A stretch of DNA of 64,000 bases from the IMG/VR virus record IMGVR_UViG_3300032307_000369, positions 1 through 64,000 of that record. One strand, given 5' to 3'. A program made the translations under genes and the position numbers. Of the stretch, positions 1 to 58,863 are shown in pieces (the first letter of the stretch is position 1; each line of letters opens with the position of its first letter). The notes under the pieces were generated by a model that saw only the letters and a list, made by a program, of their open reading frames with translations, was not told the origin of the DNA and did not search any database.

Positions 1-150
1 GGTCTTATCAGTGATCGCTACCTCGCGGTAGTGAGCAGGCTTGTCTAAATGAACTATTACTAGCGGAGTTATGTAGGCATACCTCCTTTGGCTGTGTCAC
101 CACAGTTATTCTTCGTAGACAGCAAGCCGCCTACAGGATGTTAAACCACC
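1..150 (-). ncRNA. Candidate structured ncRNA, runs off the left edge
   Basis: Non-coding and GC-richer than its flanks. Minus-strand pairings: GGCUUG/CAAGCC, CUGUG-guga-CACAG, GGAG-GUAUG/CAUA-A-CUCC, CUACC-gcga-GGUAG, plus a crossing GUAGGC/GCCUAC. Downstream of promoter 296-324. Confidence 0.5.
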
Positions 151-156
151 CTTAAA

Positions 157-241
157 TTCTTATACAACTGCACATTCTGGACCACGCATAGTAGGCATCG
201 GTCATCCTCCTACAGCTATTCAATGTGCATGTGTATAAGAA
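157..241 (-). ncRNA. Candidate ~85-nt structured RNA
   Basis: Long closing stem CUUAUACACAUGCACAUU / AAUGUGCAGUUGUAUAAG enclosing a GUAGG/CCUAC inner helix. Confidence 0.45.
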
Positions 242-295
242 CTTCTTATACTTCTAATTTTTAAAGAGCATTTACTAATTGCTTAGTAAGTATCT

Positions 296-324
296 ATTGT
301 AGCATTAACTTTCGTCTTTGTCAA
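296..324 (-). promoter_or_regulatory. sigma70-type promoter
   Basis: TTGACA-N17-TACAAT on the minus strand. Confidence 0.8.
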
Positions 325-343
325 CACTTTTTTAAAAATATTT

Positions 344-361
344 TGTTGTATTTCAACAACA
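344..361. promoter_or_regulatory. Putative operator TGTTGTA-N4-TACAACA (1 mismatch)
   Basis: tgttgta tttc aacaaca, 19 nt upstream of the -35 of promoter 296-324; perfect copies at 4231 and 56453. Confidence 0.5.
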
Positions 362-375
362 TAGAAAACTTATTA

Positions 376-766: not shown

Positions 767-1369
767 ATGATTACTTCAATTTTTCCAAACAAAGTGTTAA
801 TTAAAGACTTTGATTTGAGTGACGAGTGGAACAACAATGTTACAGCAATAGTAAAAGCCATATTTGCCAAAGAGTTGGCAGAAAGAGGCGATTATGCTGC
901 CGCCGGAAATGACAGTATTTCTGTGTTCACTGAAGAAAACATGAAAGTTTGCCCAGAACTTGTAGAACTAAGACAAATGTTTGTAGACTGCTTTTATGAG
1001 TTGGCTAGTTCATATACTACTAACAAACTCACAAAAGAAGACATTGAACAACGTGTTAGAAAAGATTTAGGTCGTTTACCCTTTATGAAAAAGAATGATT
1101 TCAAACGTGTTCATAATCATGATTCCATGGTAGATGCCTTTGCAATCTTTTATCTAACAGATTTAGATAATGAAAAAGATGGTGGAGAATTAATTCTACA
1201 TGATCCAAGTTTTTCTGGAGTGTTCAACTTCCATGAAAAAAGAACATTTGGTATTGCCACTAAAAAACATAGAATGGTCATTTGCCCAAACCATATTTGG
1301 CATGAAGTGTCAATGTACACTGGCGAAAAAGAACGTGCCACTATTGTGTTAAATCTTAACGCCATATAA
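767..1369 (+). CDS. 2OG-Fe(II) oxygenase, TIGR02466-like
   Basis: HNHD...AIFYL, GGELILHDP, P..WHEV..Y.G..ER motifs; SD AAGGGG. Confidence 0.8.
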   Translation: MITSIFPNKVLIKDFDLSDEWNNNVTAIVKAIFAKELAERGDYAAAGNDSISVFTEENMKVCPELVELRQMFVDCFYELASSYTTNKLTKEDIEQRVRKDLGRLPFMKKNDFKRVHNHDSMVDAFAIFYLTDLDNEKDGGELILHDPSFSGVFNFHEKRTFGIATKKHRMVICPNHIWHEVSMYTGEKERATIVLNLNAI

Positions 1370-1370
1370 T

Positions 1371-1455
1371 TGGTACCCCTCCTCGGATTCGAACCGAGAA
1401 ACCTACGGCACTCCTTTTGAGAGAGCTGACTTTACCAAAATTTGTCCAGAGGGGC
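1371..1455 (-). tRNA. tRNA-Leu(CAA)
   Basis: GCCCCTC/GAGGGGT, anticodon loop ctCAAaa, long variable arm, CCA. Confidence 0.92.
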
Positions 1456-1464
1456 ATATTGAAT

Positions 1465-1680
1465 TTGTTGCAGTAGTTCCACCATCGTTATTGGAACCAT
1501 TCACCTGGATTAACTAGCCCGGGCAGGACTCGGTACGTCACTTGGGATACTTAACCAGCGTAGCAACCAATCTGCGAGGATCTTCCGATCCTCTGGGAGT
1601 TGAACCCATTTGCCTTCTACTATATCAGTCCTTCGAAGAAACCTCTATAGCGTGTTGTTCTCTTGCTGACACTACAACAA
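1465..1680 (-). ncRNA. ~216-nt structured RNA containing a circularly permuted tRNA-like module (Y-RNA/YrlA-like)
   Basis: 10-bp closing stem UUGUUGUAGU/ACUGCAACAA. Internal order: T arm (UGGG-UUCAACU-CCCA), 7-bp hairpin GAGGAUC-GGAA-GAUCCUC, D-like arm GCA-GAUUGGU-UGC. Confidence 0.6.
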
Positions 1681-1684
1681 AACT

Positions 1685-1759
1685 TGGTGCCCCAGGATGG
1701 AATCGAACCACCACACCCTGCTTACAAAACAGGACCTCTACCACTAAGGATACAAGGGC
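1685..1759 (-). tRNA. tRNA-Thr(TGT)
   Basis: Anticodon arm CCTGT-ttTGTaa-GCAGG, TTCGATT loop, CCA. Confidence 0.93.
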
Positions 1760-1841: not shown

Positions 1842-1848
1842 ATATAAT

Positions 1849-1943
1849 TGGCGGAAAGCAGAGGAGTCGAACCCCACCCGGCTCATCACCAGGACCCAGT
1901 TTTCAAGGCTGGTCGGGGAACCAACTCCCCTGCATTACTTTCC
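1849..1943 (-). tRNA. tRNA-Ser(TGA) with atypical D arm
   Basis: GGAAAGT/GCTTTCC, G73, loop ctTGAaa, long variable arm, D arm GGGGAG-TTGG-TTCCCC, CCA. Confidence 0.85.
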
Positions 1944-1949
1944 ATAACT

Positions 1950-3003: not shown

Positions 3004-3011
3004 AAATTGCT

Positions 3012-3074
3012 AAGGGACACATTCTAATGTTGTTTGAGACTGAGCTGGGGGTCTGTGTTCAGCAAGTCTCCCTT
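3012..3074 (-). ncRNA. Structured spacer (three-way junction candidate)
   Basis: AAGGGA/UCCCUU closing stem, GAGACU/AGUCUC with GCUG/CAGC, and ACAUU/AAUGU. Confidence 0.35.
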
Positions 3075-3079
3075 CTAAC

Positions 3080-3155: not shown

Positions 3156-3162
3156 ATATAAC

Positions 3163-3244
3163 GTAAGGCTATGCGAGCTCATCTGCATACTTAGGCTTTT
3201 TGTCTTCTCCTGCCCGGGCAGTTACGACTGTAGCGTCACCTTAT
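3163..3244 (-). ncRNA. Structured spacer RNA
   Basis: UAAGG/CCUUA closing stem, UGCCC/GGGCA palindrome, UAUGC/GCAUA hairpin. Confidence 0.35.
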
Positions 3245-3247
3245 GAT

Positions 3248-3414: not shown

Positions 3415-3424
3415 AAATTTGTAA

Positions 3425-3625
3425 ACACACTGTCTGCGGCATTTCAGCCCATGCCAGCTCAATGTGTGTATTAAAGCACTCTTCATGGATGAACCCACTT
3501 GCCGTACGGCCTGAGAATGCTTTAATACGTAACCATTTTTTTATCCACACAAGGATAAGCCATCCGGTACGCCGCCCGTTTGCTCCATGTTTTAAGTGCG
3601 GAGCCAGGACCTCGTTTCCTGTATG
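3425..3625 (-). ncRNA. Structured RNA region at the head of the tRNA array
   Basis: ~14-bp stem GUAUUAAAGCAUUCUC/GAGUGCUUUAAUAC with two internal hairpins; ACACAUUG/CAGUGUGU; GCUCC/GGAGC; UUAUCC/GGAUAA. Confidence 0.45.
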
Positions 3626-3641
3626 TTCACACTGTGTACTG

Positions 3642-4249: not shown

Positions 4250-4840
4250 CTATTCTTTATCAGCAAGATTGAAGTCTACTGGGATTGCAAGCCTACACTG
4301 TCCTTGGAAAGGATTAACATAATGATACAGGAAACTAGGGAAGATTGCAAATTCTCCTGACTTTGGACTGTATACATTGGATTTAAATTTTGGCATCATC
4401 TCAAGTAGATAGCCTCTGTTTGCGTTGACTCTTGGATCTTCCAGTGTGAGTTCCCCACCCTTGCCATCTTCAACCAATAGATAAAAGACTCCAGTCATGT
4501 GGGATCCTGAGTGATTGTGATTGATCATAAAGTATCCAGGAGAATATCCTGCAACCCATCCACGTAGATAACTGTGTGGGTAATTGGACAAGTCCAAATC
4601 AAAAGATTCTTTTAAAAATGTAGCAAACGCAGGGAGTACTACTTCTGTTTTGAATCGTTCAATTATTGCTGACCCTGACTCAAATATGTTATCTTGAAGT
4701 ATATCGCTTGGCGGATTTTGTAAATCGTAAAGGGCAAACAGTTCACCAACTAGATCATTCAACAGATTCTGATCTTTGATTGAATCTTTAAGCACAGGTG
4801 TGGGCCAAAGATAGTTCATTCCATTAGTTAACAAGGTCAA
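4250..4840 (-). CDS. 2OG-Fe(II) oxygenase, TIGR02466-like
   Basis: HNHSGSHMTGVFYL, GELTLEDPR, FPSFLYHYVNPF...R motifs. Confidence 0.85.
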   Translation of the reverse strand: MTLLTNGMNYLWPTPVLKDSIKDQNLLNDLVGELFALYDLQNPPSDILQDNIFESGSAIIERFKTEVVLPAFATFLKESFDLDLSNYPHSYLRGWVAGYSPGYFMINHNHSGSHMTGVFYLLVEDGKGGELTLEDPRVNANRGYLLEMMPKFKSNVYSPKSGEFAIFPSFLYHYVNPFQGQCRLAIPVDFNLADKE

Positions 4841-5225
4841 ACTCCTTTAAAAAATACATCTTTACATCTGGTATAATACCAATCTCTTCATTAAAATCAA
4901 AACCTACTGCATTCAGTATCTTATTGTATGTATCTTTATCCTGCTCGTAGGGAACATAGTATGGATCGTTGCCATGTAGCAATTCTGGATCATTTAGTGA
5001 TTCGTAAAAATCCTCACTAAAATGCTGGTTAAGCCATCGAGCATAGCATATGGCAACTACATAACTCTTAGCAGGATATACCCAACCTAATTCTGTTGTT
5101 GTAAAATACTTAATGGCGTTTTCTACTATTTCATCTCGTACTTCAACTTTGTGCAGACTTAGATCATCATCGTGTTCAGTATTGAGTCTGTGAAATATCT
5201 CTTGACGTATCTTCCATTCTTTCAT
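4824..5225 (-). CDS. Hypothetical protein of the radical SAM cluster
   Basis: ORF with overlapping neighbours; WVYPAKSYVVAICYA core. Confidence 0.7.
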   Translation of the reverse strand: MKEWKIRQEIFHRLNTEHDDDLSLHKVEVRDEIVENAIKYFTTTELGWVYPAKSYVVAICYARWLNQHFSEDFYESLNDPELLHGNDPYYVPYEQDKDTYNKILNAVGFDFNEEIGIIPDVKMYFLKEFDLVN

Positions 5226-6126
5226 AATATTCTAATAATCCTCGATAGCCATTACAACTGTTGGTTAGATCTCTAACGTATCTGTAATGTTCTGTTAAAC
5301 AATGACCCTTAAAAGGACAACTTTGACATATTGGGCTTAGACTTTGTTTTTCTTTTTCTGCCCAAGCAATGTATTCCTCAAAACTGTCTAGTTCTAAGAA
5401 GTATTCGTTATCGTTGAGATCAAACTCTAAAACAGCAAAATTTCCTTTAGGAGTAATGTACACATGGTCATCACTAAAACTGTTATATATTTTATCTAAA
5501 CTATCTTGTATATGATATTCATTGATAAACTCAAACTTCTTCTCTACTGGACTCTCTAACCACTTGATAACAAAGTTTTCAAAATCTCTGTGTGACACAC
5601 TGTGACAGTTGGCTTGGTTGGTGCTGTATGGTTTGATCTCAACTGATGATACTGCACTGCACATATTCAATTCATGTATCATGCTATCAACATCTAGGTC
5701 AATTAATTTTTTACTGGCTAGGATAAGAACGTATAAAGGCTTTTGAGACATCAGCATATTTTGATATACAGTTTCATTTTTTTCTCTAGCTTCAAAATCG
5801 TAGCTGACACTGAGCGTAATGTCATCGTCAAAGAACCAATCATGTATCATACTGTAGTTGGTTATGATATTAATAGAACCTGTATAATATTTTTTAATGG
5901 TACGTTTTAGTTCATAAAATTCTTCACGTTTTAAAATTCCAATTTCACCACCATACAAATCAATACCTTTAATTTTTGTATGTGCTGTAATTTGTTGTAG
6001 ACGTGTTTCTAACTGCTCAGAACTAATAGTCAATCTGTCACGTAGCTGTTGAGGAGTTAGGTAACAGAAGTTGCAACTAAAATTACAATAGTACGTTGGG
6101 TTAATGGATACTGTAACTTCACGCAT
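5176..6126 (-). CDS. Radical SAM protein with C-terminal Cys cluster (SPASM/Twitch-like)
   Basis: CNFSCNFC, LYGGEI, CQSCPFKGHC. Confidence 0.9.
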   Translation of the reverse strand: MREVTVSINPTYYCNFSCNFCYLTPQQLRDRLTISSEQLETRLQQITAHTKIKGIDLYGGEIGILKREEFYELKRTIKKYYTGSINIITNYSMIHDWFFDDDITLSVSYDFEAREKNETVYQNMLMSQKPLYVLILASKKLIDLDVDSMIHELNMCSAVSSVEIKPYSTNQANCHSVSHRDFENFVIKWLESPVEKKFEFINEYHIQDSLDKIYNSFSDDHVYITPKGNFAVLEFDLNDNEYFLELDSFEEYIAWAEKEKQSLSPICQSCPFKGHCLTEHYRYVRDLTNSCNGYRGLLEYYERMEDTSRDISQTQY

Positions 6127-7189
6127 ATTCTTTTACATACTCTGTTGGTTCTAAAATGCCTGACATGTTATTAGCTTCAATGATCTTAGGCGCGAGTGCC
6201 TTCATGCGTATACAATGTGCCTCTACTAGATTGAAATCTTTTAGGTCTTTGATTGTTTTGCGACAGCCGTTACAAATTTCAAACATTGGACAAGTGTAAC
6301 ATGCTTGCTTCAAACTTTGTAGTTCAGGCTCTACTCTTAATGGGAAGATCTTTTTACCTAACATCTCTTCTTTAAAATTGATTGAGTACAGTCTGTCATC
6401 TCCAAATGATCCACAACTGTAGTAGTCCCCGCTTGGTTGTAGTGTTCTAATACCGCCATCACATTTACGATTTTGTGGACATGATGTTGCGCCACCGTTT
6501 AATCGCTTGACCATTTGTTTAGTATTAAACTCCCATTCAGTCAACCCTAGTTCCCAAATCTTAACATATATTTCGTAAATCTTTGCCAGCATGTAGGGTT
6601 TGCCCTCTTGTCCCATTACAATGTTTTTAAATTTAACAGGGGGACCACTACTAAAAGCATAGTTGAGTTTACATTCAACACCCATCTTCTTAGCAAGCTC
6701 TACATTCTTAATGGCAAGATGTTCATTCTCTTCTGTAATAACACTAATAAAGTCTGGACGATAACCCACGTGCTCTAACATAGCATCACTTACAGCCCAA
6801 AAATCTTCTTCACTAAATTCTGTAAGGTCACCCTTTAATCTTCCGCCACCGTATTGGAATGATGTAGTAATACCCATGCGTTTGTGATTAAACAACTCTT
6901 TCCACTTGCTGGGATTTTTATAAAATGGCCAAAGATTAGATGTAAAACTTAACGTGGCATTAGAACCAATAGTTTCTAAATGTTCAATAATTTTCCAGTA
7001 GTAGCTAGGATCCATCATTAAAGGATCACCACCATTAACAATGATAGTTTGTGTTTCTGGGTAGCGTTTTAAAAATGCGTAGACATACTCTAAATCTAAT
7101 TCTAAAGATTTATCTTCAGTAATGTGTGTGCTACTACAGAACGTGCATTTAAAGTTACAACGTTCTGTTGGTTTAATTATTAAATCCAT
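6119..7189 (-). CDS. Radical SAM/SPASM protein
   Basis: CNFKCTFC, NGGDPL, CPQNRKC..CGSF..CYTCPMFEICNGC. Confidence 0.92.
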   Translation of the reverse strand: MDLIIKPTERCNFKCTFCSSTHITEDKSLELDLEYVYAFLKRYPETQTIIVNGGDPLMMDPSYYWKIIEHLETIGSNATLSFTSNLWPFYKNPSKWKELFNHKRMGITTSFQYGGGRLKGDLTEFSEEDFWAVSDAMLEHVGYRPDFISVITEENEHLAIKNVELAKKMGVECKLNYAFSSGPPVKFKNIVMGQEGKPYMLAKIYEIYVKIWELGLTEWEFNTKQMVKRLNGGATSCPQNRKCDGGIRTLQPSGDYYSCGSFGDDRLYSINFKEEMLGKKIFPLRVEPELQSLKQACYTCPMFEICNGCRKTIKDLKDFNLVEAHCIRMKALAPKIIEANNMSGILEPTEYVKEYA

Positions 7190-7190
7190 T

Positions 7191-7484
7191 TTATTTTGAC
7201 AGTGGACTGCCTACTTCCAAATTGCCATCACCTCTTTCTAAACCATTCAATTGACGTATAACGTCCATGATTAAATGCTTATATTTCTGTGTAGGTCCTT
7301 CAAGTTCTTTAATCTTGGCATCCCAGTAATCTCTTTTCTCTGGAATCTCCATATCCCTAACGCAATTATTAGCGTATACCAAATACTCTTGGCAATAAAT
7401 TTCACGCTGTGCTTCGTACTTTTCTTTTAAAGAAATAAGTTCTTCTGGACTTAGGGTGTCTAAATCTACTCCATGGTCAATCAT
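7191..7484 (-). CDS. Hypothetical helical protein
   Basis: ORF translationally coupled to its neighbours. Confidence 0.6.
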   Translation of the reverse strand: MIDHGVDLDTLSPEELISLKEKYEAQREIYCQEYLVYANNCVRDMEIPEKRDYWDAKIKELEGPTQKYKHLIMDVIRQLNGLERGDGNLEVGSPLSK

Positions 7485-9112
7485 GTTATTCTCCTAAATA
7501 GCTCATTCATTATTACTAATTTGTTTTCTTCAACCCAACGAGGAATGGCTTCAGTCCTTACCACACCTTTGATAGTATTAATATTTCTAGGCGGAGTATC
7601 AGGATTTAAAATGTCTTCAATTTCATCATAGATCTCTTGATACCCATCTAAAATTTTAAAAATCTCCCAACAGTGTTTTGCAAATTCACTCACAGTAACA
7701 CTGTCTTTAAACATGTCATACATTGTTCGTATTAAATTGTTGCCTGCAAAATTCATGAAAAACATTTGCACAACATCTTCTCTTGTAAAAGAATAGCTAC
7801 TGGCAACTGTTTTATAATATGTTCTGCGATTCTTAAATAATCCGCCTTGGTTGGCAATATCCTGTTCATCAACGTTGTCAGTATATACATCAACCAGCTC
7901 AATGTTGTAAATTTCTTGATAAACAGGATCACTAATTTCGCTGTCAGGTAACGCCATTAAGTCGTAACGCCAACTTGACCATGCTCCCAAATCATAAAAC
8001 AATTCCCATTCTGCATAAAAATCATCTAAGGTACTTCCTGGCATGGCCATGATAAGTTCCATGCCAGGATGATAATCATATTTGGCACATAGATCCCGCA
8101 TGTATTTGCCAAGTTTAATTTTATCTGAGACTTTCATATCAGTGCGTTTAGCAACTTGCATTGCAACATCACTGATGCTTTGAATACTGATGTTGGGCAC
8201 AATGGCTGCTCTATCTTTTCTACCAAACGGTTGAATGATCTCAAAGAAACTATCTACTAGTCTTTTTCTTCTTTCGTAGTCTTTTGTTTTTACTTGACTG
8301 ATATCAATGAAGGTTAACCCTGCATCTTTGGCAAACTTTAAGAGTCCTAAGTCACGTTCTTCAAACACACCAAAATTAGCATCAGCACAAATAGCTTCAG
8401 TATATCCTGCTTCTACAATAGCAACACAATCCCGTTGAGCCCATTCAACTTCTTTTTTAATAATTTTTCCACCAATGCCGCCACCCCATTCACAATAGGT
8501 ACATTTAAAAGGACAACCTCTTGTGGTCTCAATGACCATCATGAGTTCCATATCGTGTTCACGACCATAGGCACTGAGTTCTTTTAGGAAACTTAGATTC
8601 TCTTCATACGGACTTGCTAGTGGAAATTCCCAACGCTGTTGTTTATTAGAACGTAACTCATAAGTGATTTGATTGACATCAATATTATCTTCAATGTATT
8701 GATCAATTACGTCAGTGACAAAGAATTCACCAGGGAACATAGGGCGTAAAATATAATCATACATCCAACGTTTTTGCCAAAGCTCTTTGTCTTTGGCTCC
8801 TATCATTGGACCACCTAGCAAATTTACTACTTTTGGATTTTGTTTTTTAACGTATTCAGCAATGTTGTCGCACAGTGTATAATTCCAAACATAACTGCTG
8901 TACATGACTATATCAGCTTCTTTAATTAGCTCATATATCTCTTCAATGTTTTGATACTTGTTATATTTGTAAGGAGGTTCTAGCCATTCAACTTGATCGG
9001 CGTATTTTCCGTTATGCTCGTAAAAACTTTTGCATAGCATCCACGTGACTGGATTGATTAAACTCCAGTCGGCATGTGGCGGATTGATAAAGGCTATTTT
9101 GATTCTTTTCAT
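7481..9112 (-). CDS. Cobalamin-binding radical SAM protein (class B methyltransferase-like)
   Basis: N-terminal B12-binding-type domain (SSYVWN...LLGGP), TTRGCPFKCTYCEW, DANFG. Confidence 0.88.
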   Translation of the reverse strand: MKRIKIAFINPPHADWSLINPVTWMLCKSFYEHNGKYADQVEWLEPPYKYNKYQNIEEIYELIKEADIVMYSSYVWNYTLCDNIAEYVKKQNPKVVNLLGGPMIGAKDKELWQKRWMYDYILRPMFPGEFFVTDVIDQYIEDNIDVNQITYELRSNKQQRWEFPLASPYEENLSFLKELSAYGREHDMELMMVIETTRGCPFKCTYCEWGGGIGGKIIKKEVEWAQRDCVAIVEAGYTEAICADANFGVFEERDLGLLKFAKDAGLTFIDISQVKTKDYERRKRLVDSFFEIIQPFGRKDRAAIVPNISIQSISDVAMQVAKRTDMKVSDKIKLGKYMRDLCAKYDYHPGMELIMAMPGSTLDDFYAEWELFYDLGAWSSWRYDLMALPDSEISDPVYQEIYNIELVDVYTDNVDEQDIANQGGLFKNRRTYYKTVASSYSFTREDVVQMFFMNFAGNNLIRTMYDMFKDSVTVSEFAKHCWEIFKILDGYQEIYDEIEDILNPDTPPRNINTIKGVVRTEAIPRWVEENKLVIMNELFRRIT

Positions 9113-9145
9113 AGATTATACTATTATACAGCATAAAGTTAACAA

Positions 9146-9661
9146 TTACAAGCCTTCTACATTATAAGTGAAACTAGCAAGTCTTCGTGTAATTTTACTT
9201 TTACTAGCTCTATGGAAAAAGCCAGGAGTTTGATTGAGCAACACTAAATCTCCTTTTTTAGGATAGTAAGTGTCAATGTTACCTTCCCCGGGCCATTTGA
9301 ATTGTATTTCCCCACCAGTTGCAGGGTTCTGGTCATCAAAGTAAAATAAGAAGAAGATATTACCTCCTTCAAATCCATCGTTGTGCCAAATACTGCTGTC
9401 AGCATCTACACCTTCAGCAATAACATAACTCATAAAATTATTCTTTGGAAACGCTTGATTAATGTATTTTTCAGTTATGTATACTTTGGCTGCTTCCATT
9501 TGCAACACTACTTCTTTAGGCAGGTTATCTTTAAAGTTATCACGCAAACGCTCTTCATGATATTGAAACTCTACGCTATCAATATCGATCATGCTGGCTA
9601 ATTCTTCTTCTCTAAAATAAGCATATCCTTTAGTAAGGAAATCATTCTTCCAATCTAACAT
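9146..9661 (-). CDS. 2OG-Fe(II) oxygenase
   Basis: WHND, GGEIQF, FHRA...RRLASF. Confidence 0.8.
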   Translation of the reverse strand: MLDWKNDFLTKGYAYFREEELASMIDIDSVEFQYHEERLRDNFKDNLPKEVVLQMEAAKVYITEKYINQAFPKNNFMSYVIAEGVDADSSIWHNDGFEGGNIFFLFYFDDQNPATGGEIQFKWPGEGNIDTYYPKKGDLVLLNQTPGFFHRASKSKITRRLASFTYNVEGL

Positions 9662-9662
9662 C

Positions 9663-10685
9663 TCATTTCTCCAGTTTCATTTGTACGTATTTAAATGACT
9701 TTTTAAAAACACACTCATCTAAGTCTTTGGTTAATTCTTTATAGTCACTGCTGATAAAACAACTGAACCCGCATTTTTGATAAAACTCACAAGTAAAGCA
9801 ATTGCGTTCATTCATAAAGTTTTGAATAATAGCTGTGCCTTCTAAATTGGATGTGACATTGTTTTTCATCAACACACTTCCTGAACACCCTTTAGGTGAA
9901 GTGTTATCGTACATAATAGTAAAACTACTACCACGTGTACAAGCCATTTTATTGTTGGGTGCAGTTCCTAAAAATGATTCTACATTCATAGTCTTAGGAT
10001 ACTTATCAATTAATGTTTTATAAAATTCATACAACTCTGACTCTTTTGGCATCATTACTTTTAATGCGTTATGACCAGGTAACAAGTGATCCCATGTCAT
10101 GGTAAAGTTATTGTACAAGTAATCGTGATACTCGTCACCCTTTAAAAGATTAGCAATATTTTGTTTAGTGATTACCAGGCTGATTAATTTAACATAAGGT
10201 TTGAACTGTTCAATATTTTGTTTAAAAATTTCAAACTGAGCAGGATTAAATCTGCCAGCTAGGTCATAACTAACACTCATAGTCAAGTCGTATTTTTGAC
10301 AAAACTGTATCACATGATCCATTCTATCGTTAACTAAATTCGTAACAAAGTTGAAGATTAACACTTTATCCTTAGGAACTTTGTTTCGAACTTGTTTTAT
10401 GAATTCGCCGTAATACTCAATAAAGCCTTGATCTATTAGTTCATCCTGAAATAGTTCGCCACCCATAATATGTAGGTGAAATTCTTTGTTTTTATTATTT
10501 TTAATCCAATTGCATACAGGGTCAACTTTTTTTAGAATTTCCTCTTGGCTCAAACCAATACGACTGTTATGATCCTGTGGACAGAATACACAACTCATAT
10601 TGCAATGTTCAAAGAAGTTGACTACGATCTCAGACCAGTCAATTACTTTTTCCTTTATTACGCCATAAAAAAATTCATCACTCAT
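9663..10685 (-). CDS. Radical SAM protein (SPASM-like C-terminus)
   Basis: CNMSCVFC, MGGELF, CFTCEFYQKCGFSC. Confidence 0.9.
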   Translation of the reverse strand: MSDEFFYGVIKEKVIDWSEIVVNFFEHCNMSCVFCPQDHNSRIGLSQEEILKKVDPVCNWIKNNKNKEFHLHIMGGELFQDELIDQGFIEYYGEFIKQVRNKVPKDKVLIFNFVTNLVNDRMDHVIQFCQKYDLTMSVSYDLAGRFNPAQFEIFKQNIEQFKPYVKLISLVITKQNIANLLKGDEYHDYLYNNFTMTWDHLLPGHNALKVMMPKESELYEFYKTLIDKYPKTMNVESFLGTAPNNKMACTRGSSFTIMYDNTSPKGCSGSVLMKNNVTSNLEGTAIIQNFMNERNCFTCEFYQKCGFSCFISSDYKELTKDLDECVFKKSFKYVQMKLEK

Positions 10686-50780: not shown

Positions 50781-50855
50781 CTGGCGATAGTTCAACGGAT
50801 AGAACAGTAGCCTTCTAAGCTATTAATCCAGGTTCGATTCCTGGTCGCCGGACCA
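50781..50855 (+). tRNA. tRNA-Arg(TCT), second copy
   Basis: CTGGCGA/TCGCCGG, anticodon arm GTAGC-ctTCTaa-GCTAT, CCA. Confidence 0.94.
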
Positions 50856-50872
50856 CTTTTAGAAAGTTTGCT

Positions 50873-51706
50873 ATGAAAATTAACCTAGTCAGTGACATGC
50901 ACATCAACTTTCAAGATATTAACTTGCCAGGTGGTGATGTGCTCATTATGGCTGGTGATATCATGGAAGCTGGGCATCTACGTCTTGCTGACAATGCTAA
51001 AAAGAATACTTTTATTGCAGACCGGTACCGTAGATTCATCAATGAAGAATTAATCAAATACCGTCATGTGATCTACGTTGCGGGTAATCACGAACATTAT
51101 AGTAACAGCTATGACGATACTCACGATAGACTAAAACGTGAATTGCCTGACAACGTGCATTTTTTAGAAGCAGAATCAATCAAGATTGATGATGTATGGT
51201 TCTTTGGTGGCACGTTTTGGACTGACATGAACAAGGGTGATCCTATTACTGCCAGTGTGTTAAAACAAAACATGGCTGACTTCAGTGGGTCTATCAAATT
51301 TGGTAATAGTATTCGTGTTGATACCATGTACGGTGATAGTTTTTACACCAGTAAATTCACTCCAGCGTATGCCAAGGGCGTGTTTCACGAAACAATGGAA
51401 AAATTGAAAACTTTTTTAGAAGCTCACCCTGATGAAAAAGTTGTTGTAGTAAGTCATCATGCACCAACAGAGTTGAGTGTTAATGAATACTACAAAAATG
51501 AATTCCATATGAATGGTGGATACCATAGTCGATTGGGTGATTTTATTTTAGATCATCCTAATATCAAAGTATGGTGCCATGGTCACATGCACGATCCGGT
51601 TGATTACACTATAGGCACAACTCGTGTGCTGAGTAACCCACGTGGTTATAAAGGATATGAGCAACAAGCTGAAGTGTTTGATCCTAATTTTAGTTTTGAC
51701 GTATAA
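50873..51706 (+). CDS. Calcineurin-like metallophosphoesterase
   Basis: SDMH, AGD, GNHE, SHHAP, HGHMH. Confidence 0.9.
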   Translation: MKINLVSDMHINFQDINLPGGDVLIMAGDIMEAGHLRLADNAKKNTFIADRYRRFINEELIKYRHVIYVAGNHEHYSNSYDDTHDRLKRELPDNVHFLEAESIKIDDVWFFGGTFWTDMNKGDPITASVLKQNMADFSGSIKFGNSIRVDTMYGDSFYTSKFTPAYAKGVFHETMEKLKTFLEAHPDEKVVVVSHHAPTELSVNEYYKNEFHMNGGYHSRLGDFILDHPNIKVWCHGHMHDPVDYTIGTTRVLSNPRGYKGYEQQAEVFDPNFSFDV

Positions 51707-51717
51707 GGACAACAGAC

Positions 51718-52347
51718 ATGGGATTTGTTTGTGATGGAGATTTATCTAAGATATTTGGACGCATTGACAAAAAACTGTCTGTTGTGCATGATAAAGACAA
51801 GTCGTTAGTTAAACTACTTGATCTTGACATTGAACAAGGACCGTGGCTTGCTGGCGGAGCCGTACTCACATGGCTCAGTGGACATCCTGTTGGAGACAGT
51901 GACTTTGATATCTTTTTCAAAGACTTGCGACAGTTTGATGAAATGTTTGGCAGGCTCATGCGCAATCATGCTAGTATTATCTATACCAGTGAAAACGCAT
52001 TAACTCTACATCTTACCATTGATGATGAACTCAAACGCATACAATTAATTCGAAAGAGTTATTTTGATTCTGCAAAAGATGTAATTGATCATTTTGATTT
52101 TACAATTTGTCAATTGGTCACTGATGGATACCAAGTAATTGGTGCTGATCATACCTTTGAACATTTAAAAGAAAAAAGAATTGTCAGTGTAGGTCCAGCA
52201 AAGCGGTCTGTGGTAAAACGAATTGTCAAATACGTTAGTTATGGGTATACCGTTGATCAAAATTTGATGCAGTCTATTCTTGACAACCCAGATGATTATG
52301 ACTGGTCGTTTAATAACATAGATGAAAATTATGAAAACGCATTCTAA
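51718..52347 (+). CDS. Nucleotidyltransferase, CCA/poly(A)-polymerase head-like
   Basis: LAGGAV.......DSDFDIFF, FDFTIC. Confidence 0.65.
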   Translation: MGFVCDGDLSKIFGRIDKKLSVVHDKDKSLVKLLDLDIEQGPWLAGGAVLTWLSGHPVGDSDFDIFFKDLRQFDEMFGRLMRNHASIIYTSENALTLHLTIDDELKRIQLIRKSYFDSAKDVIDHFDFTICQLVTDGYQVIGADHTFEHLKEKRIVSVGPAKRSVVKRIVKYVSYGYTVDQNLMQSILDNPDDYDWSFNNIDENYENAF

Positions 52348-52714
52348 GTATCATGGTTGGAGTTTACTAGACCCACGTCCAGTATTTTACCTAGACGAAA
52401 CAACTCACACTGAATTGTGTGTATGGAACGGTATATACATGACCAAAAAACAAGCTATGTTGATTGCGTGTGAAAAATACTTGTCAATTTGGCCTACCCC
52501 AACTATGAAAAATCGTAGCTATCAAGAGTTCATTACTGCATATTTTAGTAATGCGTTTGGTCACAGAGAGTGGGATGGCATTATTTCTAGATTGAACAAC
52601 GGACAAGATCACTACAATTTGCTAGTTAAGATGCTAAAACCGCATACTCAAAAGATGCCGGCATATTCCGGACCAGAAGTTTTGTCTTGGTTTAACCTAC
52701 ACAAACAAAAATAG
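52322..52714 (+). CDS. Hypothetical protein
   Basis: ORF; start may be ATG 52331. Confidence 0.6.
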   Translation: MKIMKTHSKYHGWSLLDPRPVFYLDETTHTELCVWNGIYMTKKQAMLIACEKYLSIWPTPTMKNRSYQEFITAYFSNAFGHREWDGIISRLNNGQDHYNLLVKMLKPHTQKMPAYSGPEVLSWFNLHKQK

Positions 52715-52722
52715 GCTATATT

Positions 52723-52941
52723 ATGACTCGTTATACAGCAGAAGTTAAATACGACAAAGACACAGACGAACATTATTTGCAGTTTGATCCAGAAGTTCTA
52801 TCTCAAATGGGATGGGATTTTGGTGATACTATAATTTGGAAGGATAATAACGATGGGTCATTCACGCTTACGAAAAAAGTGGATAACCAACCCAGTGACC
52901 AGACTTCAAATGTTCCAGTTAATGGAGCCGCTGAAGAGTAA
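52723..52941 (+). CDS. AbrB/MazE-like swapped-hairpin small protein
   Basis: L.F..E.L.QMGW..GD.I.W......F.L pattern. Confidence 0.6.
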   Translation: MTRYTAEVKYDKDTDEHYLQFDPEVLSQMGWDFGDTIIWKDNNDGSFTLTKKVDNQPSDQTSNVPVNGAAEE

Positions 52942-53536
52942 ACTACTAGGTTTCCCTTTATACAAAGAAGAAATCAGTGCCGTAATTGGTGAATTACTTA
53001 GTACTAAATTTAGAGCTGATATCATACAAGCTGAAGCAAGCCAAGTAGATATAGGTGATGTAAACGTGAGTGCCTGTTATGATCCAGAATTGGACAGTAT
53101 GGATCGACCTTGTATTGAAATAGTATTAGTTTATAATCCTTACGATACATTTTTAATTTTTGATCAAGAATTATTTTCCACATTGACCAAAAGACTCTGT
53201 GATGCACTATCACATGAACAAATTCATCAACAACAGCACAGATCTAGATTTTGGGAAGATGTGGATTATGATGACCCTGATGACGATGAAGCATATTTGG
53301 CTAACAAAGATGAAATTGATGCATACAGTCATAACATTGCCAATGAACTTTTGGACTTCGCAGACCTAAATCAGGTCTTGACATTAATACAATATCCAAG
53401 TAAAATAAAGATTGAACACAGCGTAAACCTTTGGGTTTACATGCAAACATTTAACAACGATACAAATCATCCAGTAATCAAAAGATTACTAAAAAAAGTT
53501 ACTAAAATTCTACCTAAGGTAGTTTTACAAAGATAA
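52910..53536 (+). CDS. Hypothetical protein with HExxH motif
   Basis: ALSHEQIH, YL...DEIDAY; start reset to ATG 52910. Confidence 0.6.
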   Translation: MFQLMEPLKSKLLGFPLYKEEISAVIGELLSTKFRADIIQAEASQVDIGDVNVSACYDPELDSMDRPCIEIVLVYNPYDTFLIFDQELFSTLTKRLCDALSHEQIHQQQHRSRFWEDVDYDDPDDDEAYLANKDEIDAYSHNIANELLDFADLNQVLTLIQYPSKIKIEHSVNLWVYMQTFNNDTNHPVIKRLLKKVTKILPKVVLQR

Positions 53537-53653
53537 ATAAAATACTATGAAGACAACAGCATATCAATTTGCATCCAATAAGAAGATTCCTTCTTCCGTT
53601 GTCTACTTGTCTTTAATCCCACGAATACGATTACAACACTCTTAAAAAGTTAA

Positions 53654-53754
53654 GGGAGTGTTGCTAATATTGGCCTAAGGGCAGAGCTTATACCTCTGTA
53701 AGCACCGTCTAGATAAGGCGGCGAATGTGGGTTCGATTCCCGCCACTCCTACCA
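53654..53754 (+). tRNA. tRNA with TAT anticodon (nominally Ile) and a 28-nt variable region
   Basis: GGGAGTG/CACTCCT, A73, CCA; anticodon arm CAGAG-ctTATac-CTCTG; V-arm CCGTCT-agata-AGGCGG; T arm GTGGG-TTCGATT-CCCGC. Confidence 0.8.
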
Positions 53755-53760
53755 AACATT

Positions 53761-53845
53761 GCCTGCATGGTGAAATAGGTAAACACAGCAGACTTAAAAT
53801 CTGCCGGAGAAATCCTTCCCAGTTCGATTCTGGGTGCAGGCACCA
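53761..53845 (+). tRNA. tRNA-Leu(TAA)
   Basis: GCCTGCA/TGCAGGC, anticodon arm GCAGA-ctTAAaa-TCTGC, CCA. Confidence 0.94.
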
Positions 53846-53852
53846 AATACAG

Positions 53853-53881
53853 TTGACAAAGATAACAAAAACATATATAAT
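53853..53881 (+). promoter_or_regulatory. Consensus sigma70 promoter
   Basis: TTGACA-N17-TATAAT. Confidence 0.8.
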
Positions 53882-53904
53882 AAGGAACACTTTAAAAGGA
53901 AAAT

Positions 53905-53988
53905 GCGACTGTGGTGGAATGGTATACACAGCAGACTTAAAATCTGCCGCCGCAAGGATTGAGGGTTCGAGTCTCTCCAGTCGTACCA
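53905..53988 (+). tRNA. tRNA-Leu(TAA), second copy
   Basis: GCGACTG/CAGTCGT, same anticodon arm as 53761-53845, CCA. Confidence 0.94.
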
Positions 53989-57546: not shown

Positions 57547-57989
57547 AACAAGAGTTGGACGAACAACTATGTACCAAGTACCCTAAGATATTTGTAAACC
57601 GTCATGAAGACATGACTACTACTGCTATGTGTTGGGGCTTTGGTTGTGGCGATGGATGGTATCAAATACTTGACAGTCTTTGCAGTCAAATTCAACACCA
57701 CATTGATTGGAACAACAGTAACTTTGATAAAGGTTATACTCAATACAAACAAGTTCCGCAAGTGGTTGTTGATCAAGTCAAAGAAAAATTTGGTGGGTTA
57801 CGTTTTTATTACCAAGGTGGTGATGACTACATTCACGGACTAGTTAGCATGGCAGAATCTTGGGCAGTTAACACTTGTGAAGAGTGTGGATCGTCTGGAA
57901 AGATTCGACATGGCGGATGGATCAAAACTCTTTGTGATAAGCACGAAGAAGAGCGGCAACAACGATATAAAGAACGATTCGATGTTTAA
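57543..57989 (+). CDS. Hypothetical phage protein
   Basis: CG.GW, QVKEKFGGLRFY, CE.CG...C motifs. Confidence 0.75.
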   Translation: MKQELDEQLCTKYPKIFVNRHEDMTTTAMCWGFGCGDGWYQILDSLCSQIQHHIDWNNSNFDKGYTQYKQVPQVVVDQVKEKFGGLRFYYQGGDDYIHGLVSMAESWAVNTCEECGSSGKIRHGGWIKTLCDKHEEERQQRYKERFDV

Positions 57990-58863
57990 AGAAGACTTAA
58001 AGAAGTATGTAGAAACTTCTAACCTAGTTAACATGAAAGAGTGTGGTGACGGTATCTACGTGCTAAAGTACAAGAAGAAAGTGTTCTACGATAACTTGTG
58101 GAACGAATACATTGCTGAATGTCGTGGCTCTATTGTGGACAAGGATTTCAACTTGGTTGCTTATCCATTCACAAAGATCTACAACTATGGTATTGAAAAG
58201 GAAGCACCAGTGCTTGCTCCAGATACTAAGGTAACTGCTTTCCGCAAGGTTAACGGTTTTATGGTTGCTTGTACATTGCATAACGGCAAACTGTTAGTGA
58301 GTACTACTGGTAGCACAGACAGCGACTATGTAAACATGGCACGTGAACTGATTGACGAAGCAAAGTACTTAGACTTGTGCTCACGTTGGGCAGGTTATAC
58401 ATTTATGTTTGAGTGCGTTCATCGTAACGACCCACACATTGTTCCTGAAAAGGAAGGTATGTATGTCCTAGGCTATCGTGAAAATAAATGGCACACTCCT
58501 GTAGAACATGATCCGTTCATGTTAATGGAAATGAGTCGTGTGTTAGATTGTTTTGTGCCAGAAAGCATAATGACCAATATGGCACGTTTACAACAGTTGG
58601 CTAAGGAATGTAAGCATGAAGGTTATGTATTCTATACTGACGATGGTGTAAGTGCCAAAATCAAGAGCCCTTACTATTTGACTTCAAAGTGGGTTGCCCG
58701 AAATCCGCGCACAGACAAATTGGTGAACTTGCAAAATGACATCAAGCACAATCTTGACGAAGAATACTATCCACTCGTGGATGCTATCCGTGCTAACATT
58801 GTTGAATACACTGCTATGGACGAGCAAGCTCGACTAGCCTGGGTAAGGGAACAATTGGCATGA
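57982..58863 (+). CDS. RNA ligase, T4 Rnl1-like
   Basis: ECRG, PF.KIYNY, KVNG (motif I), FEC, EGYV, KIKSPYY; start reset to ATG 57982. Confidence 0.85.
   Translation: MFKEDLKKYVETSNLVNMKECGDGIYVLKYKKKVFYDNLWNEYIAECRGSIVDKDFNLVAYPFTKIYNYGIEKEAPVLAPDTKVTAFRKVNGFMVACTLHNGKLLVSTTGSTDSDYVNMARELIDEAKYLDLCSRWAGYTFMFECVHRNDPHIVPEKEGMYVLGYRENKWHTPVEHDPFMLMEMSRVLDCFVPESIMTNMARLQQLAKECKHEGYVFYTDDGVSAKIKSPYYLTSKWVARNPRTDKLVNLQNDIKHNLDEEYYPLVDAIRANIVEYTAMDEQARLAWVREQLA

What the first reader, a model, noticed from the sequence alone, without database searches (positions are those of the whole stretch)
1465..1680. 216-nt RNA with a circularly permuted tRNA module (Y-RNA/YrlA-like) inside the tRNA array
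Seen (minus strand, 1620-1560): GUAG stem, A-rich linker, T arm UGGG-UUCAACU-CCCA, a 7-bp hairpin closed by GGAA where an acceptor stem would be, a D-like arm with GG (GCA-GAUUGGU-UGC), then CUAC. The whole RNA is closed by a 10-bp terminal stem. Established: bacterial YrlA Y RNAs have this T-acceptor-D permuted order and bind Ro60/Rsr, in operons linked to RNA repair. Inference: a phage Y-RNA-like or tRNA-mimic RNA, larger than typical YrlA. No Ro60 gene is in the window, so it may target a host protein.
Basis: partly seen in the sequence, partly recalled or inferred. Interest (0 to 1): 0.7.

Follow-up and report, generated by a model that had tools for sequence, protein, structure and literature searches.

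The report
Phage tRNA-array RNA with kissing loops
The roughly 221-base non-coding RNA that this freshwater giant phage carries between two tRNA genes is real, very abundant and elaborately folded, with a tRNA look-alike arm and two self-complementary loops that suggest copies stick to each other, but it is not a Y RNA and matches no catalogued RNA family.

Summary
The gap between tRNA-Thr and tRNA-Leu (window 1456-1684, minus strand) encodes a structured RNA with a terminal stem, a T arm, a 7-bp GGAA-capped hairpin and a D-like arm with GG. I found about 170 homologues in uncultured jumbo-phage contigs. All sit in tRNA arrays, and nearly all directly abut a tRNA or lie within a few hundred bases of one. 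Covariation supports ten helices and an H-type pseudoknot. A short GGN/NCU helix closes the cloverleaf instead.

It is not a YrlA. There is no Rfam hit, no Ro60/TROVE gene in 13 carrier genomes, and no Ro60-binding motif.

Three findings are new:
- Two hairpin loops are perfect palindromes in 117 of 119 variants and stay palindromic as they mutate. This is the published signature of symmetric intermolecular kissing loops.
- Five freshwater metatranscriptomes show very high depth confined to the RNA. Two of them hold head-to-tail joints that are absent from DNA.
- 11 of 21 carrier records also hold GOLLD in the same array.

Best reading: a new self-assembling phage RNA that displays a tRNA-like elbow. 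Its function is unknown.

The parts
1462..1682 (-). Likely mature RNA (nt 3-223 of the 229-nt gap; RNA nt = 1685 minus window coordinate)
   Evidence: Depth block in 5 RNA libraries and head-to-tail joints 1682->1462 and 1680->1462. The covariance model matches 1452-1685 at 232.7 bits.
1671..1681 (-). P1 terminal stem, 5' strand (nt 4-14); pairs with 1464-1474
   Evidence: 97-99% canonical; pairs 8-217 and 11-214 have 4-6 pair types; 2-bp insertions occur on both strands together.
1464..1474 (-). P1 terminal stem, 3' strand (nt 211-221)
1667..1670 (-). P10 5' strand (nt 15-18, GUCA), stacked on P1; pairs with 1537-1540
   Evidence: Predicted by RNAalifold. 97-100% canonical, with one-sided G-U changes only. 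Retained in the subgroup that has a different P1.
1657..1666 (-). Conserved single-stranded loop GCAAGAGAAN (nt 19-28)
   Evidence: Nearly invariant in 93 representatives. Partner unknown.
1654..1656 (-). P8 5' strand (nt 29-31); pairs with 1553-1555
   Evidence: 96-100% canonical. Pair types: GC/GU/AU at one pair and UA/AU at the next.
1619..1651 (-). P2 long hairpin (nt 34-66)
   Evidence: Covariation in the lower and upper stems.
1631..1638 (-). P2 tip palindrome CUUCGAAG (nt 47-54): candidate symmetric kissing loop 1
   Evidence: A perfect palindrome of 8-12 nt in 118 of 119 variants. The core hexamer is UUCGAA, UGGCCA or UGCGCA.
1609..1614 (-). Closing helix of the tRNA-like cloverleaf, 5' strand (nt 71-76); pairs with 1557-1562
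   Evidence: It is 5-6 bp with clear compensation in divergent members.
1594..1608 (-). T arm (nt 77-91), loop UUCAACU
   Evidence: 97-100% canonical; the outer pair has 6 pair types. The loop is UUCRANN in most members.
1576..1593 (-). P4 acceptor-like 7-bp hairpin with GGAA loop (nt 92-109)
   Evidence: Many compensatory variants. Loops are mostly GNRA (GGAA in 61). Absent or short in a minority of members.
1563..1575 (-). D-like arm (nt 110-122), loop GAUUGGU
   Evidence: The stem covaries (GCA/UGC, GUA/UAC, GUC/GAC, UAC/GUA). GG is kept wherever the T loop has UC.
1541..1552 (-). Conserved junction AAGUAUCCCAAG (nt 133-144)
   Evidence: Highly conserved. nt 136 covaries with nt 24, but this may be a clade signature.
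1530..1533 (-). Pseudoknot 5' strand (nt 152-155); pairs with the P7 loop at 1482-1485
   Evidence: Pairs 152-203, 153-202 and 154-201 are 100/100/93% canonical with CG->UA and GU->UG/AU/UA/GC changes. The helix extends to 4-6 bp in several clades.
1504..1527 (-). P6 hairpin (nt 158-181)
   Evidence: Stem 95-100% canonical, up to 5 pair types.
1517..1524 (-). P6 tip palindrome GCCCGGGC (nt 161-168): candidate symmetric kissing loop 2
   Evidence: 12 distinct hexamers, all palindromic, in 117 of 119 variants. The two innermost pairs, including the two adjacent central bases, are 100% Watson-Crick while changing (CG/GC/UA/AU). At least 46 state changes on the tree.
1476..1497 (-). P7 hairpin (nt 188-209) with conserved loop AUAACGAUGG
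   Evidence: Five of six stem pairs are 100% canonical, and three of those have 4 pair types.
1685..1759 (-). Upstream tRNA-Thr(UGU), whose encoded CCA end abuts the RNA
   Evidence: In homologues an upstream tRNA of varying identity directly abuts the RNA in most loci.
1371..1455 (-). Downstream tRNA-Leu(CAA); its RNase P site would set the 3' boundary of the precursor

Best explanation
This is a member of an uncatalogued family of structured non-coding RNAs of about 220 nt. Uncultured freshwater jumbo phages carry it as a cassette inside their tRNA arrays.

Shown:
- It lies on the tRNA strand, and in most loci a tRNA directly abuts each side.
- It accumulates as a discrete, very abundant RNA.
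- It folds into a P1/P10 stack, a junction that carries a long hairpin (P2) and a permuted tRNA-like cloverleaf (short closing helix, T arm, GNRA-capped acceptor-like hairpin, D arm), and an H-type pseudoknot domain (P6, P7, PK).

Inferred:
- It is co-transcribed with the tRNAs. RNase P cutting at the downstream tRNA, followed by 3' trimming, would set its 3' end. An endonuclease cut after the upstream CCA-AG would set its 5' end.
- The two self-complementary hexamer loops (P2 tip and P6 tip) pair with the same loops of other copies. The RNA would then work as a homo-oligomeric RNA particle that displays tRNA-like elbows. That makes it a small analogue, and frequent neighbour, of GOLLD, rather than a Ro60-tethering Y RNA.

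What the particle does is not known. A multivalent tRNA mimic that engages tRNA-recognising host or phage factors is my leading guess.
For: Family and structure:
- 173 loci match at more than 60 bits; 161 copies are full length and 119 are unique.
- All helices are 93-99% canonical apart from the lower part of P2 (83%), against 5-70% in slid controls, and 20 of 36 RNAalifold pairs show double changes.
- The pseudoknot is compensated in several clades.
- The frequent G-U pairs (34-66, 45-55, 154-201) would be C-A on the other strand, which fixes the minus strand as the functional one.

Context:
- The upstream and downstream tRNAs mostly abut the RNA directly, and their identities vary widely.

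Expression:
- Depth over 1460-1690 reaches about 80,000 (X2), 10,000 (X13) and 430 (X6). Flanking tRNAs reach 34 at most in four of the runs (a relative's tRNA reaches about 300 in X6), and the neighbouring ORF reaches 0.
- Three DNA runs are flat across the same stretch.

Oligomerisation:
- Both tips are perfect palindromes in 117-118 of 119 variants.
- The P6 tip uses 12 different palindromic hexamers and shows covariation of adjacent central bases.
- Kretsch et al. use this same criterion for intermolecular kissing loops in OLE and GOLLD (PMC12286853).
- As an internal control, the P4 loops are ordinary non-palindromic GNRA loops.

Kinship of context:
- GOLLD (RF02032, 196-214 bits) is present in 11 of 21 carrier records, on the same strand and usually 0.1-2 kb away. 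It is present in 0 of 47 unrelated viral records.
Against: - No physical evidence of oligomers.
- The P2 tip is almost invariant (3 changes), so its palindromy rests on few events.
- Palindromic loops could instead be sites for a dimeric protein.
- The tree used to count changes rests on short sequences that may recombine.
- The window's own record (70% complete) and several complete relatives lack GOLLD, so any partnership with GOLLD is not obligatory.
- P4 is missing in some members, and the T/D elbow motifs are missing in a few clades, so the tRNA mimicry is not universal.
- Contig depths sum over relatives and are a poor measure of abundance.
- The trans function is entirely inferred.
Confidence: 0.55

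Rival explanations
1. Monomeric tRNA mimic or decoy. The cloverleaf imitates the tRNA elbow to occupy a tRNA-recognising factor, such as a host anticodon nuclease or other tRNA-targeting defence, a modification enzyme, or RNase P. The palindromic tips would be only stable hairpin ends or protein sites.
For: The cloverleaf has a canonical T loop and D-loop GG, and the two co-vary in presence. It sits in a tRNA array. It is very abundant.
Against: It does not explain why the central four loop bases, which cannot pair within one hairpin, stay self-complementary through 12 sequence variants. P4 and the elbow motifs are lost in some members, while the pseudoknot core and the palindromes persist.
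Confidence: 0.2
2. YrlA/Y-RNA-like RNA that binds a host Ro60/Rsr and tethers it to an effector.
For: Same T / acceptor-like / D module order as YrlA. YrlA genes do occur in some phages (PMC4201824).
Against: No RF02553 hit on the RNA. No TROVE gene in 13 carrier genomes. The GNCGAAN0-1G motif is absent. The RNA is twice the size and has an unrelated pseudoknot domain. The host is unknown, so a host Ro60 cannot be excluded.
Confidence: 0.06
3. Cis-acting or by-product element of the array. It would be a structured spacer that guides or insulates tRNA precursor processing, or marks a mobile cassette boundary. It would accumulate only because it is nuclease-resistant, like T4 species 1 and 2 RNAs whose function is still unknown.
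For: The termini AGUUUUG...ACAAAUU resemble ordinary inter-tRNA spacers of the same array. Unrelated embedded elements share them. The flanking tRNAs differ between phages. T4 has stable non-tRNA RNAs at the same kind of site.
Against: About 220 nt with an invariant junction sequence, a compensated pseudoknot and maintained palindromes is far more constraint than a spacer needs.
Confidence: 0.1
4. Ribozyme or enzymatically circularised RNA. The head-to-tail joints would reflect a covalently closed circle, made by self-ligation or by a host or phage RNA ligase acting on ends held together by P1. Circularity would be essential to the function.
For: Joints 1682->1462 (X2) and 1680->1462 (X3) occur in two independent RNA libraries and are the only contigs covering the 3' end there. 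They are absent from three DNA runs. No genomic tandem arrangement was found in viral or metagenome contigs, where at least 46 normal copies were recovered. The window encodes an Rnl1-type ligase.
Against: Reverse transcriptase jumping from the 5' end of one abundant molecule to the 3' end of another gives the same joint. Only 2 of 5 RNA runs show it. Contigs need only a few reads to cross a joint. The Rnl1-like gene is absent from 12 other carrier genomes, and RtcB and Rnl2 are absent from the window's own record. No known ribozyme family matches.
Confidence: 0.08

Closest known systems
GOLLD and ROOL RNAs (phage and prophage RNAs near tRNA islands that form RNA-only homo-oligomeric cages)
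   Same: Phage-encoded, embedded in or beside tRNA arrays, highly structured with pseudoknots, and abundant. Symmetric loops keep palindromy while covarying, which is the criterion used for GOLLD L21a and OLE L9.3. GOLLD itself lies in the same arrays in 11 of 21 carrier records.
   Different: About 220 nt against roughly 580-800 nt or more. No match to RF02032 or any other Rfam model. It contains a permuted tRNA-like cloverleaf. Oligomerisation here is inferred from sequence only.
YrlA (bacterial and phage Y RNA with a tRNA-like domain; Rfam RF02553)
   Same: T arm, then an acceptor-like stem-loop, then a D arm, closed by a helix that leads into the rest of the RNA. Conserved T-loop and D-loop GG.
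   Different: No Ro60 gene nearby, no Ro60-binding motif, and no covariance-model match. It has an extra long hairpin and a pseudoknot domain. It has palindromic loops. It sits in a tRNA array rather than next to rsr.
Phage T4 species 1 and 2 stable RNAs (rnaC, rnaD)
   Same: Non-tRNA stable RNAs encoded on the tRNA strand directly beside tRNA genes of a large phage that carries rIIA.
   Different: The family model matches only T-arm-sized pieces of the T4 cluster, at 8 bits or less. Sizes are 139 and 119 nt. No palindromic loops are known for them (own knowledge).
phi29 prohead RNA (pRNA) and HIV-1 DIS-type kissing loops
   Same: Viral RNAs that multimerise through loop-loop base pairing. DIS uses a 6-nt self-complementary loop, as proposed here (own knowledge; pRNA assemblies are mentioned in PMC12990946).
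   Different: pRNA loops are hetero-complementary and the ring docks on the packaging motor. No sequence or structural similarity to either.
Permuted tRNA genes expressed through a circular RNA intermediate (Cyanidioschyzon merolae)
   Same: Permuted order of tRNA arms, plus head-to-tail joints in RNA (own knowledge of Soma et al. 2007; joints).
   Different: There is no anticodon arm. The acceptor-like stem is capped by a tetraloop without CCA. About 160 nt of unrelated structure replaces the anticodon arm. Circularity is unproven.

Membership tests
YrlA / bacterial Y RNA (RF02553) | Match to the Rfam covariance model at the gathering score (69 bits) | tested here: not met
   No hit on 1456-1684 at E<=10, and none on the homologous RNA in 10 loci at E<=5. 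The only hits (19-25 bits) lie on adjacent tRNAs or span tRNA pairs, a known false-positive type.
YrlA / bacterial Y RNA (RF02553) | Encoded next to a Ro60/Rsr (TROVE domain) gene | tested here: not met
   PF05731 is absent from the 245-kb record and from 12 other carrier records, six of them at least 94% complete. The positive controls were detected.
YrlA / bacterial Y RNA (RF02553) | tRNA-like domain in the order T arm, acceptor-like stem-loop, D arm | tested here: met
   The window's nt 69-129 fold by energy alone into exactly this cloverleaf. 66 of 105 distinct variants give three hairpins. Covariation is shown, and the T-loop/D-loop link.
YrlA / bacterial Y RNA (RF02553) | Ro60-binding stem with the conserved GNCGAAN0-1G motif | tested here: not met
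   The motif is absent from 117 of 119 variants. The two incidental matches lie elsewhere in the RNA. The motif definition comes from PMC4201824.
YrlA / bacterial Y RNA (RF02553) | Binds Ro60; T and D loops modified by TruB and DusA | not testable with these tools
   Needs immunoprecipitation and modification mapping.
GOLLD (RF02032) | Match to the Rfam model at the gathering score (150 bits) | tested here: not met
   The RNA gives no GOLLD hit. Separate GOLLD genes of 196-214 bits lie 0.1-16 kb away in 11 of 21 carrier records.
GOLLD / ROOL kind (self-assembling phage tRNA-island RNAs) | Phage-encoded, in or beside tRNA islands | tested here: met
GOLLD / ROOL kind (self-assembling phage tRNA-island RNAs) | Symmetric loops whose palindromy is kept through covariation of adjacent bases | tested here: met
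   The criterion is taken from PMC12286853.
GOLLD / ROOL kind (self-assembling phage tRNA-island RNAs) | Forms an RNA-only homo-oligomer | not testable with these tools
   Complex prediction refuses RNA-only jobs. Needs native gel, SEC-MALS or cryo-EM.
tRNA (RF00005) / tmRNA | Detected by ARAGORN or the Rfam tRNA/tmRNA models; free acceptor end and, for tRNA, an anticodon arm | tested here: not met
   No call on 1456-1684. The acceptor-like stem is closed by GGAA, and no anticodon arm is present.
T4 rnaC / rnaD stable RNAs | Sequence and structure similarity to the T4 genes | tested here: not met
   Model R1, run without filters over the T4 tRNA cluster, gives only local hits of 8 bits or less (the best ones on T-arm-like pieces) and spurious full-model alignments. 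The whole T4 genome gives none.

The most novel reading that the evidence does not exclude
The RNA is end-joined into a circle of about 220 nt. Through its two different self-complementary loops it assembles into closed rings or cages of even subunit number. These would present many tRNA-like elbows at once. It would be a miniature relative in kind of GOLLD, possibly cooperating with GOLLD, and it would act as a multivalent trap or scaffold for tRNA-recognising host defence or processing factors during jumbo-phage infection.
Probability: 0.2. Interest if true: 0.9.

Novelty: new variant of a known kind. Interest (0 to 1): 0.78.

Why it matters
Natural RNA-only assemblies have only just been recognised: GOLLD, ROOL and OLE in 2025, and short RNAs such as manA in a 2026 preprint. 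Their functions are unknown.

This family adds a compact candidate of about 220 nt that is easy to synthesise. It has two independent palindromic interfaces and a built-in tRNA-like module. It shows very high depth in lake and river metatranscriptomes, and it shares tRNA arrays with GOLLD. This makes three questions directly testable:
- Why do phage tRNA islands collect ornate RNAs?
- Do such RNAs act on the tRNA machinery or on anti-tRNA defences?
- How small can a self-assembling natural RNA be?

It also shows that tRNA arrays of jumbo phages hold several conserved non-tRNA RNAs that routine annotation misses.

Tried and rejected
- Rfam at gathering and at permissive thresholds on the window and on 10 homologous loci gave nothing on this RNA.
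- blastn of three family members against 50,697 phage records found no cultured phage with it. Megablast of the first 8 kb also found nothing.
- The pattern GGTGAATGGTNNNNNATAA was too unspecific. All 120 hits were chance.
- The 17-mer scan of prokaryote genomes gave only two real hits, both on short, probably mis-binned MAG contigs, so it gives no host clue.
- My own idea of a helix 17-19/127-129 is rejected. It would cross P8, it conflicts with the covarying closing helix, and it has no covariation.
- A 155-182 pair and a 24-136 pair show mutual information, but each may be a single clade event and is left open.
- A phage Rnl1 ligase as a conserved circularising partner is rejected. It is present in the window but in 0 of 12 other carriers. 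RtcB and Rnl2 are absent from the window's own record.
- Homology to T4 rnaC/rnaD or to anything in PA5oct is rejected.
- Genomic tandem copies as the source of the head-to-tail joints were not found. The three viral-contig hits have unrelated upstream cassettes. No metagenome contig holds the joint, while at least 46 hold the normal context.
- I did not hand a typed dot-bracket string to build_rna_model or the count of structure pairs. The pair counts were made in scripts instead.

Full report
**Setting**

The window is the first 64 kb of a 245,550-bp uncultured virus record, estimated 70% complete. Sixteen tRNA genes lie on the minus strand between 376 and 3414. The finding occupies the whole 229-nt gap between tRNA-Thr(UGU) at 1685-1759 and tRNA-Leu(CAA) at 1371-1455. 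I number the RNA so that nt 1 is window 1684 and nt 229 is window 1456.

The phage carries rIIA. Its nearest cultured relatives, the PA5oct-like jumbo Pseudomonas phages, are only 31% identical in that protein. Complete relatives that carry the same RNA are 345-367 kb.

**Checking the observation**

Folded alone, nt 69-129 give a perfect cloverleaf. The whole gap folds at -67 kcal/mol, with z = -2.0 against shuffles.

No Rfam family matches the gap, even at E<=10.

**Homologues**

- A neighbouring 2OG-Fe(II) oxygenase ORF led to related contigs with a 74-83% identical RNA at the same kind of site.
- A conserved 17-mer and a second, independent pattern then recovered about 200 viral contigs.
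- A profile search finds the RNA in 173 loci. 161 copies are full length and 119 are unique, with a median length of about 225 nt.
- There is one copy in the window's genome. A few contigs have two copies.
- No cultured phage has it by blastn.
- In most loci an upstream tRNA ends directly at the RNA's first base and a downstream tRNA starts directly after its last. The tRNA identities vary widely: Asp, Thr, Asn, Phe and Tyr are the commonest upstream, and Gln, Met, Ile and Ser the commonest downstream. The RNA therefore behaves as a cassette within tRNA arrays.

**Structure**

On 93 representatives below 93% identity (alignment A2), RNAalifold predicts 36 pairs, and 20 of them have double compensatory changes. 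My pair counts on all 119 variants are. The slid controls for the same helices give 5-70% canonical.

| Helix | Positions (nt) | Canonical |
|---|---|---|
| P1 | 4-14 / 211-221 | 98% |
| P10 | 15-18 / 145-148 | 99% (one-sided changes only) |
| P8 | 29-31 / 130-132 | 98% |
| P2 | upper and lower parts | 93% and 83% |
| T arm | 77-80 / 88-91 | 99% |
| P6 | 158-161 / 178-181 | 98% |
| P7 | 188-193 / 204-209 | 97% |

Mutual information exposed a pseudoknot between nt 152-155 and the 3' part of the P7 loop, nt 200-203. Different clades replace C-G by U-A, replace G-U by U-G, A-U, U-A or G-C, and lengthen the helix to 4-6 bp.

The frequent G-U pairs would be C-A on the opposite strand, so the minus strand is the functional one.

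**The tRNA-like module**

The acceptor-like hairpin P4 and the D arm align poorly in MAFFT. They form in most variants when folded individually, and they show many compensatory stems.

G65 and U66 belong to P2, where C35-G65 covaries to U-A, and the 3' partner is not conserved. The closing helix is G71-G72-N73 with N126-C127-U128. These pairs are 91%, 94% and 69% canonical, and the third has four pair types plus G-A. The helix grows to 5-6 compensated pairs in divergent members.

T-loop UC and D-loop GG are present together in 109 variants, absent together in 7, and discordant in 3. This fits a tRNA-type elbow, but the 7 belong to only a few clades. A minority of members lack P4.

One variant (L250/L251) keeps the 5' half but has a different 3' domain, and that domain again has a palindromic loop. 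A subgroup has a different, longer terminal stem but keeps the P10 partners.

**Palindromic loops**

The tips of P2 and P6 are perfect palindromes of 6-12 nt in 118 and 117 of 119 variants. Shuffles typically give 4 nt.

- The P6 tip uses 12 different hexamers, all palindromic.
- Its two innermost pairs, including the two adjacent central bases, are 100% Watson-Crick while switching among CG, GC, UA and AU.
- At least 46 state changes map on a tree built without those columns.
- The P2 tip is mostly UUCGAA, with UGGCCA and UGCGCA variants.

Adjacent or near-adjacent bases cannot pair within one hairpin. Kretsch et al. used exactly this pattern to support symmetric intermolecular kissing loops in OLE and GOLLD (PMC12286853). 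As an internal control, the P4 loops are ordinary GNRA tetraloops.

Two different self-complementary interfaces per molecule would allow dimers, closed rings of even number, or chains.

**Expression**

Twenty-two runs, nearly all labelled RNA and mostly freshwater or riverine, hold words of the stretch.

In five RNA runs laid on 1200-1950, depth is confined to about 1460-1690. Peaks are near 80,000 (X2), 10,000 (X13), 430 (X6), 160 (X3) and 4 (X4). One 60-nt contig identical to the window has depth 25,000 in a 62-million-letter run. The flanking tRNAs reach at most 34 in four of the runs (in X6 a relative's tRNA piece reaches about 300), and the neighbouring ORF reaches 0 in all five.

Three DNA runs are flat across the ORF, the tRNAs and the RNA, and their contigs bridge the tRNA-RNA borders. 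Contig depths sum over relatives and are crude, and tRNAs are poorly captured, but a discrete and abundant RNA is clear.

**Head-to-tail joints**

In X2 and X3 the only contigs that cover the RNA's 3' end continue directly into its 5' end (1682->1462 and 1680->1462, that is nt 223 joined to nt 3 or nt 5).

- The joint is absent from the three DNA runs. In contrast, a synteny joint that exists in DNA does appear in both kinds of run.
- Viral contigs show no tandem copies. Three pattern hits have unrelated upstream cassettes.
- No metagenome contig holds the joint, although at least 46 hold the ordinary 3' context.

So the joint arises at the RNA level. It is either a circular RNA or end-to-end template switching on an abundant small RNA. 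Either way it marks the ends at about nt 3 and nt 223, just outside P1.

A T4 Rnl1-type ligase gene lies at window 57877-58863. It is absent from 12 other carriers, and RtcB and Rnl2 are absent from the window's own record. No conserved phage ligase partner emerges.

**Comparison with known families**

- **YrlA:** it shares the T / acceptor-like / D order (PMC4201824). Every other defining feature that I could test fails: no model match, no TROVE gene in 13 genomes, and no GNCGAAN0-1G motif.
- **T4 rnaC/rnaD:** these occupy an analogous position but do not match the family model.
- **GOLLD:** an unexpected link appeared. A scan of homologous loci hit GOLLD at 201 bits right beside the RNA. 11 of 21 carrier records hold a GOLLD gene on the same strand, mostly 0.1-2 kb away and on either side of the RNA. 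None of 47 unrelated viral records do. That control is not matched for lineage, so the association may partly reflect shared ancestry. The window's own record has no GOLLD.

**Verdict**

The feature is a real, expressed and strongly constrained RNA, and it belongs to a new family. The Y-RNA assignment is not.

The best-supported mechanism is self-association through two symmetric kissing loops, giving an RNA particle that displays tRNA-like elbows. This places it beside GOLLD and ROOL in kind but not in family. Its biological role and its possible circularity remain open.

Noticed in passing
L080:227-691; also G001 234282-234746, G004 164359-164824 and eight other records: Bona fide GOLLD RNA genes (196-214 bits), sometimes with an embedded tRNA, lie in the same tRNA arrays as the RNA in 11 of 21 carrier records. 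In three cases the GOLLD gene ends only about 100 nt upstream of the RNA.
   Followed up: partly
window 3415-3641 (minus strand): A 227-nt non-coding gap upstream of tRNA-Tyr is conserved in 33 related loci. It also ends in ACAAAUUU after a terminal stem. No Rfam match. It may be another array-embedded RNA.
   Followed up: partly
window 1842-1949 (minus strand; Rfam hit at 1853-1943): A conserved 107-nt element, found in 37 loci, scores 38 bits on the tRNA-Sec model (threshold 47) and is not called by ARAGORN. It may be an unusual long-arm tRNA or a tRNA-like RNA.
   Followed up: no
window 1-375, 449-655, 2194-2297, 3004-3079, 3156-3247: Further non-tRNA gaps in the array are conserved in 3-33 related loci. 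The gap at 2194-2297 contains a T-arm-like hairpin.
   Followed up: no
L251:4452-4530 and L329:3487-3670 (minus strand): Unrelated small elements in other arrays start with AGUUUUGU and end with ACAAAUU, the same termini as this RNA and similar to ordinary inter-tRNA spacers. This may be a shared processing signal or a cassette boundary.
   Followed up: partly
L250:9666-9824 and L251:4531-4689: A family variant keeps the 5' half (P2 plus cloverleaf) but has a different 3' domain. That domain again carries a palindromic loop (CGGCCG).
   Followed up: no
L025, L026, L020, L054, L061, L080, L115 and others: A subgroup of about 14 loci has a longer, different terminal stem (UUUUAUACG..UGACA pairing with UGUCA..CGUAUAAAA). 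Some of these copies are not directly flanked by tRNAs. L370 carries one copy of each subtype, 530 nt apart.
   Followed up: partly
window 57877-58863 (+): A T4 Rnl1-type RNA ligase ORF (PF09511, 49 bits) lies just upstream of rIIA (59281-61449). It is absent from 12 related jumbo-phage records.
   Followed up: partly
window 767-1369 (+) and 4250-10685 (-): A 2OG-Fe(II) oxygenase ORF sits on the opposite strand inside the tRNA array. A second oxygenase lies just beyond the array, followed by two clear radical-SAM ORFs, a weaker 4Fe-4S/radical-SAM-like ORF and a weak B12-binding-domain ORF.
   Followed up: no
window 50781-53988 (+): A second small tRNA cluster on the plus strand. Rfam finds an extra 98-nt tRNA-like match at 53654-53751 (38.7 bits) that ARAGORN does not call.
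   Followed up: no
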